Shown here piece by piece: positions 11,801-64,000 of a DNA stretch of 64,000 nucleotides. Location: NCBI GenBank assembly GCA_951406725.2, contig OX597834.1:22568001-22632000 (forward strand), given 5' to 3'. The translations under genes and the position numbers were made by a program. The notes beneath the pieces are model-generated. The model was not told the DNA's origin and ran no database searches. It saw nothing but the letters and a program-made list of their open reading frames with translations. The stretch is from Octopus vulgaris (lineage: Eukaryota). The number at the start of each line of letters is the position of its first letter. The first letter of the stretch is position 1.

Positions 11801-12021
11801 TTTTCTTTCCTGTTTAATTATTGATAAGGGAGGTAACTCTAAATGTCTTTGTATTATCCCTTTTTGTCAAGCACTTACCGAAAACTTATCGTTCTCAACA
11901 CTCACGTGTAATACATATTTTGTGGATAGTTTCAGGCTGATACGTACCATCACAGATTTTCTCAAACTTCATTGATTTTCTTCCATGTTTCCGTAGACTT
12001 GTATCATCTTGGTTCGGCACT

Positions 12022-13074
12022 ATGGAACTGGAGAATTCGAAAATTTCAACAGAGAAAGAAACTTACCGACGTAAATTAGACTTATTATTAAATATCCACG
12101 AGAGATTACGCCAACAAAAACAAGAACTAATTGATAAAAATAAGCGCTTACGTGAAAAAACTGCACCTTTGAGAATGGACGTTAAATTACCCAATAATTC
12201 GCCTTCAACGCGCAAAATTTACAATTGTCTTAATGACATCTACGATCTGGAGTGTAAAATACACAATATTCGTCAAAAATATACCTTAAAAAAATATGAA
12301 AAAGAAAGAAATTTGAATTTACATTCTACTATGAGAATTTACCAAATTTGCAAAGAACTTTCCTTGAAAAATACTGCTGGCATGGAATTATCTGTCAGTG
12401 GAAAAAACGCTTGCGACGAACTTTCAACGGAAAATATTAACTGTAAGGAATTTCCTATCAGTGAAAAAACCGATTGTGATGAAAATTCTATCACAGAAAA
12501 AGACATTATTTTAGAAGAATTTTCTCCTAGTGAAAAAGATGTTTGTCAGGATCTTTCTTCCAGTGAAAAACAAGAATCTGAGAGACTTTCTCCCACCGAA
12601 AAAATTGGCGATGAACTTCCTGCCTCTGAAGAAAACGATTGCGAAGAATTTTATTCAATGGAAAAAACCGTTTGCAAAGAACTTTCTACAGATGAAAAGA
12701 ACATTTACGAAGAACTTTATGCCACTGAAAAATCCGATTGTGGAGAACTTTATACTAACGAAAAATACTTTTGTAATAAACTTCCTACCAATGAGAAAAA
12801 CGTTAGCGAAGAAATTCCTACCACTTCAACATTCGGTGACAAGGAATTTTCTTCTACAGAAAAACGGATTTGTGAGAAACTTTCTACCGAAGAAAAAGTC
12901 GTTTGTCAGGAAATTTTTACCACGGAAAAAAACGTTTGGGAGGATGATCTTGCAACAGAAAAACACGATTGCAATGAGCCTTCGACCAGTGAAAAACCAG
13001 TTTCCGAAGAAATTTCTACCACGGGGAAAAGTGTTTTCGAAGAACTTTCAACCACAGAAAAAAAGAGTTTATAA
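12022..13074 (+). CDS. Intronless hypothetical protein, 350 aa: coiled-coil-like N-terminus plus 22 acidic ~11-aa repeats
   Basis: 1053-nt stop-free frame in very AT-rich DNA, starting at ATG. Repeat units are 10, 11 or 12 aa (only frame-preserving length changes), consensus xEL[ST]xxEKxxC. Candidate acceptor (TTCCATGTTTCCGTAG, AG 11995-11996) lies 25 nt upstream of the ATG. ATTAAA at 13147-13152 is followed by a T-run. No family recognised. Confidence 0.7.
   Translation: MELENSKISTEKETYRRKLDLLLNIHERLRQQKQELIDKNKRLREKTAPLRMDVKLPNNSPSTRKIYNCLNDIYDLECKIHNIRQKYTLKKYEKERNLNLHSTMRIYQICKELSLKNTAGMELSVSGKNACDELSTENINCKEFPISEKTDCDENSITEKDIILEEFSPSEKDVCQDLSSSEKQESERLSPTEKIGDELPASEENDCEEFYSMEKTVCKELSTDEKNIYEELYATEKSDCGELYTNEKYFCNKLPTNEKNVSEEIPTTSTFGDKEFSSTEKRICEKLSTEEKVVCQEIFTTEKNVWEDDLATEKHDCNEPSTSEKPVSEEISTTGKSVFEELSTTEKKSL
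12352..13071 (+). repeat. Coding 33-bp tandem repeat, 22 diverged units
   Basis: Recurrent GAAGAA-TT/CT-TCT-ACC-x-GAAAAA pattern; aa 111-350 of the ORF parse into 22 units. Confidence 0.85.
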
Positions 13075-18069: not shown

Positions 18070-19027
18070 CGGCTGTGTGGTAAGAAGCTTGCTTCCCACC
18101 TACATGGTTCCAGGTTCAACCCTGTTGCATGGCACCTTGGGCAAGTGTCTTCTACTATAGCCTCAGGCCAACCAAAGCCTTGTGAGTGGATTTGGTAGAT
18201 GAAAACTGAAAGAAGCCCATTGTATGTATATATATGTGTGTCTGTGTTTGTCCCCCACCACATCGCTTGACAACTGATGTTGGTGTGTTTATGTCCCCAT
18301 AAATAAGTGATAGGATAAGTACTAGGCTTACAAAGAATAAGTCCAGAGGTTGATTTCTTCATCTAAAAAGCAGTGCTCCAGCATGGCATCAGTCAAATGA
18401 CTGAAACAAGTAAAAGAATACACAGACACACACATACATATTTGTGAGTGTGAGTCTGTGCAGGAATGGCATTCCATGTGTCCTCATTAACACTGTTTCA
18501 GCGAGGAATGGTGCCTTCGTTTGCAATCTCCAATAATCAAAAGATTCTGTAGTGTCACCCTTTTGAAGTGTGAGGACCAGAAAAATGGAGAAAAAGAAAC
18601 AGAAAAAATTTTACTTACAAAAAAAGAAGAACATTGAGAAATAGAAAATTTGCCTCAACAAGTTTCATTTAATCCTTGCCAGCAGGTAAAAATGAATGTA
18701 AAATTAAATGATGTAGAGCCTAATTTGGAATTGTTGGATATGTTGGATGAGGTGGGAAAGAACAGGTAGTGGAGCACACATAGACACACTGAAAATGAAT
18801 ACAGAGTGCAGCAGAAAAACCTCCCGTCTTTTGCAGAGCCGTTGCTGTGGCACCAAGGAAGTTAAGCAGGTGATAGTGGTGTCTTCTTAAAGCTAATGTT
18901 TTACCATTATGTTTTCAGCCATCATCATGGTTTGGGTTGATGCACACTATGTGTTTGCTGTTGAAATGTTTATCAAGAAGGAATGATGAATATGGGAGGG
19001 ATTTTTTTGCCACACCCTGGACTATGA

Positions 19028-19432
19028 TACTCTTTACTCTCTCTTTTACTCTTTTACTTGTTTCAAGTCATTTGACTGCGGCCATACTGGAGCACCGCCT
19101 TTAGTCGAGCAACTTGACCCTGGGACTTATTCTTTGTAAGCCCAGTACTGGTCTCTTTTGCCTAAACCGCTAAGTGACGGGGACGTAAACACACCAGCAT
19201 CGGTTGTCAAGCAATGCTAGGGGGACAAACACAGACACACACATACATATATATATATATACATATATACGACAGGCTTCTTTCAGTTTCCATCTACCGA
19301 ATTCACTCACAAGGTATTGGTCAGCCCGGGGCTATAGCAGAAGACACTTGCCCAAGATGCCACGCAGTGGGACTGAACCCGGAACCATGTGGTTGGTTAG
19401 CAAGCTACTTACCACACAGCCACTCCTGCGCC
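19028..19432 (-). mobile_element. tRNA-derived SINE (family B) with an internal (TA)/(TG) linker and (AGAGTAA)-type tail
   Basis: Head GGCGCAGGAGTGGCTGTGTGGTAAG..GGTTCAGTCCC; full length. Confidence 0.85.
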
Positions 19433-24155: not shown

Positions 24156-25069
24156 TACATACATACATACATGAGGGTGAATCAGAAATACAATTTCATT
24201 ACACACACAAGGTCAATCAGAAATTAATGCAACTTTTATTTGCATTACTTTTTGAAGATAAGACAAAAAGTAAGGCAAATAAAAATTGCCTTACTGTCTA
24301 ACTCACACTTGTATATGCGATTGTATGTATGTATGTATGTGTGTGTGTGTGTGTGCATACATATAATGTATACATAATGGAGGCAAAGGTGCAAAGTAAT
24401 TTTCATTGAACCACATCTTCCTCATTACACTACAGGGACTTGTTTTTATCTCTCAGTGACCAGAAGGATAAAGGACAAAGCAGAATTTGAATCTAGATCT
24501 GATAGACAGCAAAACATTTTAACCAGACAGCAGGAGGCAGATAGTTCACATAATAATAGCACCGCCTTTATGAAAAATGAAAGTCAGAATTTTAGCTGTA
24601 TGCAAGTATAAACGCATATACACATACATATACACACACATACATGTGTATATATTCATGACACACACATACACTCAGTAGTCGTATAAATGGTATGCTT
24701 TTTAAGTTCCATATATTATATACACTGAAGTATCAGCTGTAGAATTGAATGCAAGCATATAAAGCTAAATTTCTTTTTGTGGTACTTAAAAAAAATAGGT
24801 GCTCAATGTACCTGGAGTGTATGTACACATTGTATGAATGCATGTAAATTACGATGAAAGTAAACAGACAAAGTTTGCTTTAGAAGCGTTGAGATGTATT
24901 GAAAAATACAGAAATAATTAATTCTCAAATGCAGAATAATACTAAGAGAACAGCAGGGACAGGATAAAATATACATATTATTGCAGAAAAATTTTTCTGC
25001 AAATATATGGATATTTTATTATGTTCCTGCAATTTTGTTTGTATATTCTGCACTTGAGAATTAATTATA

Positions 25070-27663: not shown

Positions 27664-27669
<6 letters not shown>

Positions 27670-27739
27670 GAAAGAAGGTTTGAAAATGCAATATTAAAAA
27701 ATCTTTTAAAATTGCATTTTCAAACCTTCTTTCATATAT
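27664..27739. repeat. Inverted repeat, 29-bp arms, 18-nt spacer
   Basis: ATATATGAAAGAAGGTTTGAAAATGCAAT ... ATTGCATTTTCAAACCTTCTTTCATATAT, set among (TA)n tracts. Confidence 0.9.
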
Positions 27740-27774
27740 GATTCCATTCATGCGGTACCTTACAACTTCACTTT

Positions 27775-27811
<37 letters not shown>

Positions 27812-28944: not shown

Positions 28945-28986
<42 letters not shown>

Positions 28987-29022
28987 AAAAAGGAGATGTC
29001 GAACACGAGTGGTGATATATAA

Positions 29023-29248
29023 AAAAGGAAATGAAGAAAATGCTGACAAATAATTGAAGTAATTTAAGTAATTTAATTAGGTGAAAGTTCTTTTTACCGG
29101 TTGCGCATTTGTTATGCTTATCAAAATATTTTGATAAGCATAACAAATATTATGATAAGCATAACAAATGCGCAACCGGTAAAAAGAACTTTCACCTAAT
29201 TAAATTACTTAAATTACTTCAATTATTTGTCAGCATTTTCTTCATTTC

Positions 29249-29253
<5 letters not shown>
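29023..29253. repeat. Palindrome, 101-bp arms, with a central 21-nt duplication
   Basis: 29023-29123 versus 29153-29253 are reverse complements. Zero-spacer centre at 29127/29128; 29128-29148 is repeated as 29149-29169. Confidence 0.95.
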
Positions 29254-29294
<41 letters not shown>

Positions 29295-29777: not shown

Positions 29778-29999
29778 AGTTGTGGTTGTGACAAAGACGG
29801 CAATGACAATATTAGGTCTGTCATAGCTAGCACGAGATATTATGGATGTGCACGATCACAAGGTTAAGAGATTAACCTCTTTATTTACAATCCAACTTTG
29901 GTTTTACAATGACAGCAATCTCTCTCATTCTCTCTCCCTTTCTCTTATATATGTATATGTATGTGTGTGTATGCATGTGTGCACGTGCACAGAAGTATG

Positions 30000-30048
<49 letters not shown>

Positions 30049-30105
30049 AGGTTTGGAGATGATGTACAGGTATTATATATTAGAAGAAATGAGGTAATCA
30101 GAAGA

Positions 30106-30316
30106 TCGGATGGTTTATATTTACAGATATTTATTTATATATTACATTTTTTATATATATATCATATCACTTAGATCATTAGCACTTTCACCCATTCTAG
30201 TGGGGTTATTTGAAAACCCCACTAGAATGGGAGAAAGCGCTAATGATCTAAGTGATATGATATATATATAAAAAATGTAATATATAAATAAATATCTGTA
30301 AATATAAACCATCCGA
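30106..30316. repeat. Palindrome, 102-bp arms, 7-nt spacer
   Basis: 30106-30207 versus 30215-30316, 2 mismatches seen; looser pairing continues outward; (TA)n on both sides. Confidence 0.95.
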
Positions 30317-30342
30317 TTCTTCTCATTTCTTCTCATTTCTTC

Positions 30343-30373
<31 letters not shown>

Positions 30374-30384
30374 TTTATAGAAGG

Positions 30385-30435
30385 AGCTTCTACAGGACTA
30401 GAACTGTTTCGTTCAAATGAAATCATCAGGAAGCC
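30385..30435 (-). ncRNA. Type I hammerhead ribozyme, mirror copy
   Basis: Reverse complement reads GGCUUC-CUGAUGA-U UUCA UU UGAA C-GAA-ACAG UUCUAGUC CUGU-A/GAAGCU. Core intact; predicted cleavage between 30391 and 30390. Confidence 0.8.
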
Positions 30436-30440
30436 AATCA

Positions 30441-30491
30441 GGCTTCCTGATGATTTCATCTGAATGAAACAGTTCTAGTCCTGTAGAAGCT
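30441..30491 (+). ncRNA. Type I hammerhead ribozyme (Penelope-like)
   Basis: GGCUUC-CUGAUGA-U UUCA UC UGAA U-GAA-ACAG UUCUAGUC CUGU-A/GAAGCU. Stem I has 6 bp, stem III 4 bp, the catalytic core is intact, and a GUA triplet predicts cleavage after 30485. Confidence 0.8.
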
Positions 30492-30573
30492 CCTTCTATA
30501 AAATAAATTAATTTACTCTGCAATGTATTGAGTACCTTATTTACTGTGGTTAACCCCGACTCAACCCGGGACC

Positions 30574-30630
<57 letters not shown>

Positions 30631-30730
30631 ATATATCATCATTGTCATCGTTTAATGTCCGCTTTCCATGCTGGCATGGGCTGGACGGTTTGACTGAGGG
30701 CTGGCGAGCCAGAAGGCTGCACCAGACACA

Positions 30731-30942
30731 CAGGTCCTGAGGAAAGCTGATATCTTGATTATTGAGGTGATGGTGCACAAACACTGGTTACATTGGACTG
30801 GACACCTTATTAGAATGAAGGATAGCAGGATCTCTAAACAAATGCTATGTAGGGAACTTGTTAGAAGAAAGAGACCCTGACAGAAACCAAGGCTGCAATT
30901 TAAGGACTGTATTAAGTCCATATTAAAGGCCTACCAACTTTG
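30731..30942 (+). mobile_element. RTE-clade LINE C-terminal fragment (decayed)
   Basis: QVLRKADILIIEVMVHKHWLHWTGHLIRMKDSRISKQMLCRELVRRKRP*QKPRLQFKDCIK matches the RTE motif RLRW.GH..RM...R.PKQ.LY.EL..GKR..G.P..R.KD. Confidence 0.8.
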
Positions 30943-31672
30943 AGTAGCACTCGTCTAGACTATGCTTTAATAAAAAGGGTCTTCTCTGAGGCTAAACAAC
31001 AACAGTGACAACAACATGGCAGTATAAGGAGGAAAGGGTTCACATGGTTGCTTGATCTATTAGAAATAGCAACCAATTCTACATTGAATCATACCCAAGC
31101 ATGTAAAATTAAGAGACAGATGATTAATGTTAGATGATGTAATCGAATCCTAGATACATAATGTTTAACAGGGAAGAGATAAGAAGAGGGCGGCAGGATG
31201 ATCATGGTTGGAATCACAGCAAGTACACTCCTGACACTTCACTCACTACAAAATGGCCAATCTGAAAGTTATCTATCATAGGTAGCCAAACCATTTCTGC
31301 CAGAGATAATAAAATTACAACGAAATCTTTTTATGAAATGACCAAGAGAACCATTATCAGCATCTGGAAAGGTTTCTTATTGCTTGAGGCTAAGGGAGAT
31401 GAGGCAACTTTCCAATATTGGCAGATAACCAGGCAACAACAACAGCAGTACTGATGGTGGTAGTAACAGCAGCAATAGTAGTAATAGTTTCAAAATTTGG
31501 CACAAAGTGAGCAATTCTGAGGAGAAGGACAAGTTGATTGCAATAACTCCAAAAGGCTGAAAGGCAAAGTCTACCTCAGTAAAATTTGAATTCGGAATAA
31601 AAAGACAGATAAAATGCTGCTTAGCATTTTGCCTGGTGTGCTAACAATTCACTGCCTTAATAATAATAATAA

Positions 31673-52715: not shown

Positions 52716-52750
<35 letters not shown>

Positions 52751-52821
52751 CGGAGTAAACACATAAATGTGAAACAAGGTGGAAAAAAGAGTACTCAAAT
52801 ACCAGTGGTAGAGTAATATGC

Positions 52822-52946
52822 TTTATTTAAAGCAGCAGAAAATTCAACAAAATCTGTTACTCTGAGTTTCTCTAGCAAAAACTGTCTGATGAACGGCAAC
52901 GAGAAACTCAGAGTAACAGATTTTGTTGAATTTTCTGCTGCTTTAA

Positions 52947-52951
<5 letters not shown>
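52822..52951. repeat. Inverted repeat, 51-bp arms, 28-nt spacer
   Basis: 52822-52872 versus 52901-52951 are perfect reverse complements; the element is flanked by (TA)n. Confidence 0.95.
52882..52919 (+). ncRNA. Minimal type I hammerhead ribozyme
   Basis: CUGU-CUGAUGA-A CG GCAA CG A-GAA-ACUC A GAGU-A/ACAG. Stem I has 4 bp, stem II 2 bp with a GNRA loop, helix III is quasi-palindromic, triplet GUA. Confidence 0.65.
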
Positions 52952-63597: not shown

Positions 63598-64000
63598 TAT
63601 ATATATATATATAATGGGTTCTACCAGTCGGTTTTGAAGTATAAGTGTCCAACCGCGAGCTGTTAAAGATACTCGATACATGATTTGTTTTCGGCTGTGA
63701 CGGCAACTAATCCAGGAAACGGAGAAATCATATATATATATATATATATATACATATTACCTTCACCAAACAATATGTTACAGGTTATGACATATATAAC
63801 TAGTCAGGATGTTAACATCGGTTTCGCGTTGAATATTGCCACCAGACAGGCAATATAATGACATCGTGTGTGTATAATGTGTACAGTGTAATAAAAATAA
63901 TATCAGGAACACAAGTTTAAGACGAATGTTGAGAAAATAAAAATGTTTAAGAATAGCTGAAGGACCAAAAAAATTAGGCAATGTATTGTTACACACACAC

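What the first reader, a model, noticed from the sequence alone, without database searches (positions are those of the whole stretch)
30369..30507. Head-to-head pair of intact hammerheads forming a self-silencing 67-bp palindrome
Seen: each arm encodes a complete hammerhead (stem I 6 bp, stem III 4 bp, intact core, GUA) on opposite strands, separated by 5 nt and embedded in (TA)n, 2.9 kb upstream of the IST1 acceptor. Inference: whichever strand is transcribed, the antisense arm is made first and can capture the ribozyme in a 67-bp hairpin. This would protect a host pre-mRNA (the minus copy is sense to IST1 if the intron spans here) while creating long dsRNA, a plausible ADAR or Dicer substrate. 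The two arm differences lie in stem II and its closing position; one is CG to TG.
Basis: partly seen in the sequence, partly recalled or inferred. Interest (0 to 1): 0.78.

Follow-up and report, generated by a model that had tools for sequence, protein, structure and literature searches.

The report
Inverted hammerhead retroelement stub in octopus
The 139-bp palindrome in intron 1 of the Octopus vulgaris IST1 gene is two back-to-back, 5'-truncated 3' ends of a hammerhead-carrying retroelement (most likely Penelope-like) that landed in a TA microsatellite after the split from O. sinensis. It looks like a routine by-product of how such elements insert, not a device evolved to silence a ribozyme.

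Summary
The sequence facts hold. Arms 30368-30435 and 30441-30508 are 68 nt with 2 mismatches and a 5-nt spacer. Each arm has CUGAUGA...GAAA...GUA with helix I 6 bp and helix III 4 bp. Helix II is only 3 bp behind a U.U or U.C mismatch, and Rfam does not call a hammerhead.

The window is O. vulgaris, in IST1 intron 1. O. sinensis has a plain (TA)n at the orthologous site, so the palindrome plus a 66-nt one-sided "tail" is a young insertion.

The same architecture, (TA)n / one-sided tail / near-perfect palindrome with a tiny spacer / (TA)n, occurs four more times in the window and three times in the Argonauta IST1 locus.
- Element 52750-52951 carries a second hammerhead-like motif and has a 3' end plus tail homologous to the finding.
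- The Argonauta copies are one family with different arm lengths and a textbook Penelope-type minimal hammerhead.

A hammerhead near the 3' end, a (TA)n target, inverted 5'-truncated copies and a one-sided tail are the published hallmarks of Penelope-like elements.

The long hairpin (-112 kcal/mol) would indeed out-compete the ribozyme fold (about -7). That follows from the insertion geometry and need not have been selected. No RT/endonuclease ORF could be linked, so family membership stays inferred. This is a new member of a known kind, of modest interest.

The parts
30343..30369 (.). (TA)n tract: left half of the microsatellite that served as the target
   Evidence: O. sinensis has one uninterrupted (TA)n here.
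30368..30435 (-). Left arm: the retroelement 3'-end copy read on the minus strand. It ends ...CTATAAAATAAA directly against (TA)n and has no tail.
30385..30435 (-). Hammerhead-like motif, minus-strand copy. Position 11.1 is C, giving a U.C mismatch. The predicted cleavage site is 30391|30390.
30436..30440 (.). 5-nt spacer AATCA at the junction of the two 5'-truncated copies
30441..30508 (+). Right arm: the retroelement 3'-end copy read on the plus strand
30441..30491 (+). Hammerhead-like motif, plus-strand copy. Position 11.1 is U, giving a U.U mismatch. The predicted cleavage site is 30485|30486.
30509..30574 (+). One-sided 'tail': a 3' extension of the plus-strand copy. Across the AAATAAA junction it is homologous to the tail of element 52750-52951.
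   Evidence: z 5.3, 0 of 200 shuffles
30575..30636 (.). TACA/(TA)n tract: right half of the target microsatellite
52750..52951 (+). Sister insertion: tail 52750-52821, inverted copy 52822-52872 truncated inside the hammerhead, longer copy 52873-52951 with a hammerhead-like motif at 52882-52919 (+). It is also absent from O. sinensis.

Best explanation
The palindrome is the footprint of one insertion event of a hammerhead-bearing retroelement, most likely a Penelope-like element (PLE) or a short non-autonomous derivative mobilised by one.

The event happened in a (TA)n microsatellite of IST1 intron 1, in the O. vulgaris lineage after its split from O. sinensis.

Two cDNA copies of the element's 3' end were laid down head-to-head, one primed from each strand of the cut target. 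Each copy runs only about 68 nt, from the 3' end to just upstream of the hammerhead. One copy starts at the proximal reverse-transcription start (...AAATAAA). The other starts further downstream and so carries a 66-nt tail.

Shown: the palindrome is a lineage-specific insertion into (TA)n. It has a one-sided tail. The same architecture recurs. Copies of one family have different arm lengths. A hammerhead motif sits near the 3' end in related copies.

Inferred: the RT/GIY-YIG machinery, priming from both strands, and the joining of the two cDNAs.

Consequences, also inferred: any transcript, including the IST1 pre-mRNA, folds the element into a 67-bp hairpin, so the already sub-optimal ribozyme cannot form. 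That dsRNA may be edited or diced.
For: 1. The window is 100% identical to O. vulgaris OX597834.1, and the site lies inside the annotated IST1 gene.
2. The O. sinensis orthologous site has only (TA)n where the window has about 30357-30578. O. bimaculoides lacks the whole stretch.
3. Five elements in the window share the layout (TA)n / one-sided tail of 28-72 nt / near-perfect palindrome with a 4-28-nt spacer / (TA)n. Three of the five are absent from O. sinensis, with clean (TA)n empty sites.
4. Element 52750-52951 has a hammerhead-like motif in the same position and orientation. Its 3' end plus tail aligns with that of the finding across the AAATAAA junction (z 5.3, 0 of 200 shuffles). Its inverted copy is truncated inside the hammerhead, as expected for two independently 5'-truncated copies. 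From, the chance of a relaxed hammerhead hit in that particular ~130-nt stretch is about 1e-4.
5. Argonauta hians has three adjacent insertions of one family, with arms of about 128, 62 and 110 nt. The same tail is on one side only. They carry a canonical PLE-type minimal hammerhead: a bulged nucleotide after A9, G10.1-C11.1, and a palindromic AAUU. Helix II reads GGGG/CCCC in one copy and GAGG/CCUC in another, a compensatory change.
6. Published PLE hallmarks match: hammerheads in the repeats or 3' region, often paired on opposite strands (PMC4209133); (TA)n preference, heavy 5' truncation, an adjacent inverted truncated copy, and a 30-40-bp tail at one end (PMC8557442); a PLE protein that cleaves and extends both target strands and starts reverse transcription at two internal sites that define the tail (PMC11167929).
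7. O. vulgaris has 31 recently active PLE families (PMC13282606).
Against: - No RT or GIY-YIG ORF is linked to these copies. tblastn with Poseidon_Ac found nothing in about 230 kb of octopod sequence, and motif scans were empty.
- No further copy of the arm or tail was found in the sequence I could reach, so copy number and the full-length parent are unknown.
- The hammerheads of the finding and of element 52750-52951 differ from the published PLE consensus. They have a 1x1 mismatch instead of G10.1-C11.1, a 2-3-bp helix II, and a real helix III with a loop.
- The tails are 66 and 72 nt, against the published 30-40.
- Two independent truncations would not normally end within 5 nt of each other, so the near-equal arm lengths need an extra assumption, such as coupled synthesis or a template switch between the two cDNAs.
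- The palindrome itself is seen in one assembly only.
Confidence: 0.6

Rival explanations
1. It is the same kind of retro-insertion, but made by a non-PLE machine. Candidates are a microsatellite-targeting LINE such as Dong/R4, or a SINE-like element carrying a hammerhead (as Sm-alpha does in schistosomes) that such a LINE mobilises.
For: Dong-R4 is the most abundant recently active LINE group in O. vulgaris. No PLE ORF was linked. The reverse complement of the tail has a weak tRNA T-arm-like stretch (GGTCCCGGGTTGAGTCGGGG, read by eye). That schistosome SINE-like elements carry hammerheads is cited in PMC4209133.
Against: Head-to-head pairs, a one-sided tail, a (TA)n target and hammerheads are documented together only for PLEs. 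To my knowledge, Dong-type elements target (TAA)n and are not known to carry hammerheads or to form inverted pairs.
Confidence: 0.14
2. It is a foldback or MITE-type DNA transposon that targets TA dinucleotides. The arms are terminal inverted repeats, and the hammerhead resemblance has no significance.
For: It is a near-perfect palindrome of 140-290 bp sitting in TA repeats. It is a species-specific insertion.
Against: - The ends are asymmetric, with a tail on one side only, in all eight elements.
- Argonauta copies of one family have different arm lengths and different centres. This is a 5'-truncation pattern, not a fixed TIR.
- In element 52750-52951 the centre is simply the continuation of one copy.
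- Hammerhead motifs recur in the same orientation relative to the 3' end.
Confidence: 0.1
3. It is a non-mobile palindrome created by replication or repair errors (fold-back or template switching) at a fragile (TA)n tract, and the hammerhead-like motif is a coincidence.
For: Roughly 60-150 chance motifs of this quality are expected per genome. Helix II is defective, and Rfam gives no hit. Several unrelated palindromes cluster at (TA)n tracts.
Against: A second palindrome in the same window has a homologous 3' end and tail and its own hammerhead-like motif in the same place. The Argonauta family carries a canonical minimal hammerhead. The inserted sequences are not copies of flanking DNA.
Confidence: 0.08
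4. One reading: the head-to-head arrangement is a selected 'self-silencing' design that keeps an active intronic ribozyme from cutting the host pre-mRNA.
For: The hairpin is about 100 kcal/mol more stable than the ribozyme fold, and the antisense arm is always transcribed first.
Against: The same palindromic layout is found in sister elements without any hammerhead, and in one where one copy is truncated inside the ribozyme. The insertion is young and species-specific, with no conservation to indicate selection. The ribozyme's own competence is doubtful.
Confidence: 0.04
5. It is an assembly artefact of the O. vulgaris reference.
For: This particular palindrome is seen in one assembly only. 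My attempts to find independent contigs failed.
Against: Palindromes of the same type are shared base-for-base by the independent O. sinensis assembly, and the same type occurs in Argonauta. The arms differ at two positions, one of them a CpG transition, as expected for real, aging DNA.
Confidence: 0.03

Closest known systems
Penelope-like elements (PLEs): 5'-truncated insertions with an adjacent inverted copy, a one-sided tail and a (TA)n target (Neptune, Naiad and Hydra clades; PMC8557442, PMC11167929)
   Same: - Target microsatellite.
- Head-to-head inverted 5'-truncated copies.
- An optional extension on one end only.
- A hammerhead motif near the element's end.
- Species-specific recent insertions in a genome known to hold active PLEs.
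   Different: - Both copies here are extremely short (68 nt) and almost equal in length, so the result is a near-perfect hairpin with a 5-nt loop.
- The tail is 66 nt, against 30-40.
- No ORF was found.
- The clade is unknown.
PLE minimal hammerheads (Cervera & de la Pena 2014, PMC4209133), including 'dual min-HHRs ... in opposite strands' in Schistosoma
   Same: Type I topology, a conserved core, a palindromic element in helix/loop III (CUAG), and occurrence as dispersed truncated copies and as opposite-strand pairs.
   Different: - The published consensus has a long helix II (6-8 bp), a G10.1-C11.1 pair, one bulged nucleotide after A9, and no or minimal helix III.
- The octopus motifs have a 2-3-bp helix II flanked by a 1x1 mismatch, and a 3-4-bp helix III with a loop.
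- The Argonauta copies do fit the consensus.
Non-LTR retrozymes: tandem type I hammerhead repeats of animals (PMC7229834; bioRxiv 10.64898/2026.07.22.740005)
   Same: A type I hammerhead in a short non-coding retroelement thought to depend on PLEs.
   Different: Retrozymes are head-to-tail tandem repeats that yield circular RNAs. Here there is no direct repeat, only an inverted pair.
L1 twin priming
   Same: Both ends of a target break prime cDNA synthesis, which gives an inverted, 5'-truncated structure.
   Different: Twin priming inverts a different, upstream part of the same RNA. Here both arms are the same 3'-terminal segment.

Membership tests
Hammerhead ribozyme (type I) | Conserved core C3-U4-G5-A6-N7-G8-A9 and G12-A13-A14, an A15.1-U16.1 pair, and a non-G at position 17 | tested here: met
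   Read directly from the sequence and recovered by my descriptor scan on both arms.
Hammerhead ribozyme (type I) | Three helices around the core, with helix II closed by a 10.1-11.1 pair (normally G-C) | tested here: not met
   Helices I (6 bp) and III (4 bp) are present. Helix II is 3 bp, with U.U or U.C at 10.1-11.1. The hammerhead fold scores -6.8 kcal/mol against an MFE of -10, with ensemble probability about 1e-3.
Hammerhead ribozyme (type I) | Scores above the Rfam gathering threshold (Hammerhead_1, clan CL00010) | tested here: not met
   There is no hit at the gathering threshold. At E<=10 the only hit is a spurious 15-bit Hammerhead_3 match that uses the palindrome tip. The clearly PLE-type Argonauta motifs are also missed, so this test is weak for minimal variants.
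Hammerhead ribozyme (type I) | Self-cleavage 3' of position 17 | not testable with these tools
   This needs in vitro transcription or end mapping.
Hammerhead ribozyme (type I) | The motif is conserved in related copies, with helices kept through base changes | tested here: inconclusive
   Sister element 52882-52919 keeps the core with different helix sequences. I found it with a pairing-based descriptor, so the covariation is partly there by construction. Its position in a homologous element is independent support.
Penelope-like element | ORF with a PLE-type reverse transcriptase and a GIY-YIG endonuclease | tested here: not met
   tblastn with Poseidon_Ac_1p and motif scans found nothing in the window, L001, L002, L029 or L030. 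This is expected if the copies are 5'-truncated. The parent element could not be searched for.
Penelope-like element | Insertion bias for (TA)n | tested here: met
   The empty sites in O. sinensis are uninterrupted (TA)n for three elements. All five window elements lie between two (TA)n tracts.
Penelope-like element | Heavy 5' truncation with an adjacent inverted 5'-truncated copy | tested here: met
   All are head-to-head pairs. Arm lengths are variable within one family (128, 62 and about 110 nt in Argonauta). One copy of element 52750-52951 is truncated inside the hammerhead.
Penelope-like element | [quoted passage not shown] | tested here: met
   Unique extensions of 28-72 nt sit on one side only in all eight elements. 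They are contiguous with the arm in the two related copies. In the finding the tail is longer (66 nt) than published.
Penelope-like element | A hammerhead motif in the terminal repeat or 3' region | tested here: met
   The motif lies 22-36 nt from the AAATAAA end in the two O. vulgaris elements and about 85 nt from the end in Argonauta.
Non-LTR retrozyme | Head-to-tail tandem repeats, each with a hammerhead | tested here: not met
   There is no direct repeat of the arm anywhere in the window.
MITE / foldback DNA transposon | Fixed terminal inverted repeats with symmetric ends and target-site duplications, identical in all copies | tested here: not met
   The ends are asymmetric because of the one-sided tail. 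Arm length varies between copies of one family. A target-site duplication cannot be read in (TA)n.
microRNA / hairpin-RNA gene | Matches a curated family, or is conserved between species | tested here: not met
   Only sub-threshold matches to plant and animal miRNA models, of the kind any long hairpin gives (62 bits against 100-200). The locus is absent from O. sinensis.

The most novel reading that the evidence does not exclude
A currently active, hammerhead-bearing PLE-like lineage in O. vulgaris carries a hammerhead variant in which the G10.1-C11.1 pair is replaced by a 1x1 mismatch. It is seeding (TA)n tracts of introns with perfect 50-130-bp hairpins at a high rate: three species-specific events in 37 kb of a single intron. 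This would make it a major, renewable source of intronic dsRNA for the cephalopod ADAR and small-RNA machinery. The near-equal arm lengths may report coupled cDNA synthesis by a dimeric PLE enzyme on both target strands.
Probability: 0.2. Interest if true: 0.6.

Novelty: new member of a known kind. Interest (0 to 1): 0.35.

Why it matters
The main value is corrective. A structure that looks designed (two ribozymes locked in a hairpin) is explained by the known insertion habit of Penelope-like retroelements.

Three smaller points may deserve follow-up.
- In my literature searches I found no report of hammerhead-bearing elements in octopods.
- These insertions are recent and frequent in this locus: three O. 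vulgaris-specific events in one intron.
- Each event plants a perfect long hairpin in a pre-mRNA, in an animal group famous for heavy A-to-I editing. A genome-wide census could test whether such footprints are a notable source of editable or diceable dsRNA.

The near-equal arm lengths also offer a natural read-out of how PLE enzymes join cDNAs made from both target strands.

Tried and rejected
- **Rfam.** A scan at gathering threshold over the whole window and E-value scans around the site gave no hammerhead call, only generic sub-threshold miRNA-hairpin matches.
- **Pattern scans.** Scans of JGI metagenome contigs and IMG/VR with CTGATGA..GAAACAG..CTGTAGAAG gave 26 hits. All were unrelated coding repeats of bacteria or phages.
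- **Independent assemblies or other copies via proteins.** I ran an exact look-up of five ORFs that cross the element and a homology search with the 53-aa ORF across tail plus arm. Both found nothing.
- **Sampling more octopus genome.** A search with a Tc1-like ORF found no hits. A look-up with an Argonauta RT gene failed because the gene has introns.
- **Type III hammerhead reading**, using the palindrome tip as helix I. Rejected: there is no NUH site or helix III partner upstream (read by eye).
- **Alternative helix II registers** (UUUCAU/AUGAAA). Rejected as a hammerhead because they consume G12-A14.
- **A hammerhead-like hit in O. bimaculoides** (L030 37127). It lies inside a Tc1/mariner remnant and is a chance match.
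- **A PLE ORF in the loci held.** None found.
- **IST1 N-terminal exon in the window.** Absent. It lies just beyond position 64000.

Full report
**1. What is in the sequence**

Positions 30368-30435 and 30441-30508 are reverse complements of each other. The arms are 68 nt with two mismatches and are separated by AATCA.

Read from the centre outward, each arm is: GGCUUC / CUGAUGA / U-UUC-AUYU-GAA-Y / GAA / ACAG-UUCUAGUC-CUGU / A | GAAGCU..CCUUCUAUAAAAUAAA.

Every invariant hammerhead nucleotide is present. Helix I has 6 bp (one G.U), helix III has 4 bp, and the site is GUA.

The two arm differences are at loop II (30460 against 30416) and at position 11.1 (30465 against 30411). The second is CG in the minus copy and TG in the plus copy.

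The weak point is helix II. It has three pairs (UUC/GAA), and position 10.1-11.1 is U.U or U.C rather than the usual G-C. In the plus arm a competing 6-bp hairpin (UUUCAU/AUGAAA) would swallow G12-A14.

For an isolated arm the hammerhead fold scores -6.8 kcal/mol against an MFE of -10, and its ensemble probability is about 1e-3. Rfam gives nothing at gathering thresholds and no Hammerhead_1 match even at E<=10.

The whole palindrome folds into a hairpin of -112 kcal/mol on either strand, with z about -23.

**2. Chance**

I wrote a descriptor as permissive as the observed motif. It expects 1.4-3.4e-3 hits per 64-kb window, which is about 60-150 per octopus-sized genome.

The motif is therefore unexpected in this window but not beyond what a whole-genome scan would turn up. 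The second arm is a copy, so it is not an independent observation. On its own the motif could not be called a real hammerhead.

**3. Where the window comes from**

The IST1 exons on the minus strand (27462-26968 and 26449-26189) are 99% identical to O. sinensis IST1. The window is 100% identical over 56 kb to Octopus vulgaris OX597834.1.

Exon 1 lies just past the window end, so everything from 27463 to 64000 is IST1 intron 1.

**4. The palindrome is a young insertion**

The region is 92-96% identical between O. vulgaris and O. sinensis. At the orthologous O. sinensis site, one uninterrupted (TA)n replaces window positions ~30357-30578.

The insert consists of the palindrome plus a 66-nt unique stretch on its right (30509-30574). 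O. bimaculoides lacks the whole 29933-31255 region.

**5. It is one of several**

A scan for short-spacer inverted repeats, followed by inspection, shows five insertions in this window with one architecture. The pattern is (TA)n, then a unique tail on one side only, then a near-perfect palindrome with a tiny spacer, then (TA)n.

| Element | Extent | Arms | Spacer | Tail side |
|---|---|---|---|---|
| a | 27664-27777 | 36 nt | 4 nt | right |
| b | 28984-29261 | 117 nt | 13 nt | left |
| c | 30045-30345 | >100 nt | 7 nt | left |
| d (the finding) | 30368-30574 | 68 nt | 5 nt | right |
| e | 52750-52951 | 51 nt, 100% identical | 28 nt | left |

Elements (b), (d) and (e) are absent from O. sinensis, with clean (TA)n empty sites. 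Elements (a) and (c) are shared.

**6. Element (e) is the key**

The plus-strand copy of (e) contains a second hammerhead-like motif at 52882-52919: CUGU / CUGAUGA / A-CG-GCAA-CG-A / GAA / ACU-CAG-AGU / A | ACAG. An extended helix I is possible beyond an A.A mismatch.

Like the finding, it has a 1x1 mismatch on both sides of a short helix II.

The inverted copy of (e) starts inside the ribozyme, at GAGAAAC. The 28-nt centre is therefore simply the extra sequence of the longer copy. This is what two independently 5'-truncated inverted copies should look like.

The arms of (d) and (e) both end in AAATAAA. Their 3' ends plus tails align across that junction (AAATAAA..TTACTCT..GTATT(T)GAGTAC..CTT.TTT; z 5.3, 0 of 200 shuffles). 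The tail is therefore part of the source element, and (d) and (e) are related.

From, the chance of a relaxed hammerhead hit in that specific ~130-nt stretch and orientation is about 1e-4. The helix sequences differ between (d) and (e) while pairing is kept. I found (e) with a pairing-based descriptor, so I do not count that as clean covariation.

**7. Argonauta**

The IST1 3' flank of Argonauta hians (L002) holds three adjacent insertions of one family: 18275-18545, 18877-19160 and 19190-19372. Their arms are about 110, 128 and 62 nt.

Each consists of one copy that ends at the (TA)n and one inverted copy with the same tail, CACAAACAATGCTTCAATCGAACTAT.

Arm length, and hence the palindrome centre, differs between copies of one family. 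So the palindrome is made anew at each insertion and is not a fixed feature of the element.

The longer arms carry CC / CUGACGA / A / GGGG-CUAUUGA-CCCC / GAAA / AUUU | GG. This shows a bulged nucleotide after A9, a G10.1-C11.1 pair and a palindromic AAUU, which are the published signature of PLE minimal hammerheads. An older copy has GAGG/CCUC in helix II, a two-sided compensatory change.

Rfam misses these motifs as well, so the absence of an Rfam hit says little for this class.

**8. Comparison with what is known**

- Cervera and de la Pena (PMC4209133) found minimal hammerheads in the repeats of all PLEs. Most are dispersed as truncated copies, and some occur as pairs on opposite strands 100-700 bp apart. 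Their in vitro activity is low.
- Craig et al. (PMC8557442) describe heavy 5' truncation, an inverted 5'-truncated copy adjoining the unit, a 30-40-bp tail at one end, and (TA)n targeting in the Neptune, Naiad and Hydra clades.
- The Anolis PLE protein cuts and extends both target strands. It starts reverse transcription at two internal sites, and the interval between them is the tail (PMC11167929).
- O. vulgaris has 31 recently active PLE families (PMC13282606).

All four structural hallmarks are met here. The ORF is not. tblastn with Poseidon_Ac_1p (taken from that paper's supplement) found nothing in the ~230 kb of octopod sequence I hold, and motif scans were empty. I had no means to search the octopus genome for the parent element.

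**9. Most likely mechanism**

The steps below are inferred unless marked as shown.
1. A PLE-type enzyme cut a (TA)n tract in IST1 intron 1.
2. cDNA synthesis was primed from both strands on the element's 3' end.
3. One cDNA started at the proximal site (...AAATAAA). The other started further 3' and so carries the tail.
4. Both cDNAs stopped about 68 nt in and were joined, probably when one cDNA switched onto the other.

The near-equal arm lengths in all eight elements (spacers of 1-37 nt) are shown. They are not explained by independent truncation. They suggest coupled synthesis, which is speculative but fits the predicted dimeric enzyme in PMC11167929.

After insertion, the arms acquired two transitions, one of them at a CpG.

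**10.

The physical claim is right. Both ribozyme copies point outward, so the antisense arm is always made first, and the hairpin wins by about 100 kcal/mol.

Several observations argue against a selected arrangement:
- Elements (a), (b) and (c) have the same layout without any hammerhead.
- Element (e) has it with one ribozyme cut in half.
- The insertion is species-specific.
- The ribozyme is doubtful as a catalyst.

"Self-silencing" is a side effect and not a design. That the intronic 67-bp dsRNA is edited or diced is plausible but untested.

**11. Rivals**

- A non-PLE retroelement, such as a microsatellite-targeting LINE or a hammerhead-bearing SINE, cannot be excluded without the parent (0.14).
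- A foldback DNA transposon is disfavoured by the one-sided tails and by the variable arms within a family (0.10).
- A repair-generated palindrome with a chance motif is disfavoured by element (e) and by the Argonauta family (0.08).
- An assembly artefact is unlikely, because two palindromes of the same type are shared by an independent assembly (0.03).

**12. Verdict**

The object is a new member of a known kind: a PLE-type inverted, 5'-truncated hammerhead-bearing insertion.

The residual interest lies in three things: the variant helix II junction, the apparent recent activity in O. vulgaris, and the steady supply of perfect intronic hairpins in a heavily RNA-editing animal.

Noticed in passing
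window 52750-52951: A second head-to-head retroelement stub in (TA)n, with a hammerhead-like motif at 52882-52919 (+). It has 51-nt arms at 100% identity, a 28-nt unique centre and a 72-nt tail on the left. It is absent from O. sinensis.
   Followed up: yes
window 28984-29261: A palindrome with 117-nt arms (98% identity) and a 13-nt spacer between two (TA)n tracts, with a ~30-nt tail on the left. There is no hammerhead core in the arms, and the centre holds a small tandem duplication. It is absent from O. sinensis.
   Followed up: partly
window 30045-30345: A palindrome immediately left of the finding, with arms >100 nt, a 7-nt spacer and a ~28-nt tail on the left. It is shared almost base-for-base with O. 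sinensis and absent from O. bimaculoides. In O. vulgaris its right end has been remodelled into a TTCTTCTCAT x2.7 repeat.
   Followed up: partly
window 27664-27777 (O. sinensis L001 46164-46254): A small palindrome (36-nt arms, 4-nt spacer) with a 38-nt tail on the right, between (TA)n tracts and shared with O. sinensis. Its arm sequence (..TTTCAAACCTTCTTTCA) resembles the tail of the 30045-30345 element (..CTCCAAACCTTCCAA).
   Followed up: partly
L002 (Argonauta hians) 18275-19372: Three adjacent palindromic insertions of one family in (TA)n/(TG)n just downstream of IST1. They have canonical PLE-type minimal hammerheads, one-sided tails and different arm lengths.
   Followed up: yes
window 24939-25044; L001 49004-49109; L030 31214-31393: An older, degraded palindrome (80-90% complementary, spacer 0) with related sequence (..ATTATTGCAGAAAAAT/ATTTTTCTGCAAT..) in all three Octopus species. 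In O. bimaculoides it sits next to (TA)n and an assembly gap. It is possibly an ancient event of the same kind.
   Followed up: no
window 11941-13071 (+); L002 23410-24309 (-); L029 61253-62305: A single-exon ORF (377 aa in the window) with a coiled-coil-like N-terminus (..ETYRRKLDLLLNIHERLRQQK..), conserved between O. vulgaris and Argonauta. In O. vulgaris it is annotated as a 350-aa gene with no Pfam domain.
   Followed up: no
window 30640-30940: A SINE-like sequence followed by a LINE ORF2 C-terminal fragment (..WTGHLIRMKDSRISKQMLCRELV..), directly right of the target (TA)n. It is present in O. sinensis and absent from O. bimaculoides.
   Followed up: no
window, whole: There are 31 pure (TA)n tracts with n>=8 in 64 kb. 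About ten of them are the split halves of microsatellites interrupted by the five palindromic insertions.
   Followed up: partly
L001 27524-27616: An inverted pair of tRNA-like SINE heads (..GTTCAATTCCTGATGGTGCATTGTGTC / GACACAATGCACCATCAGGAATTGAAC..) with a 9-nt spacer in O. sinensis. It shows that short-spacer inverted duplications are not limited to the (TA)n elements.
   Followed up: no
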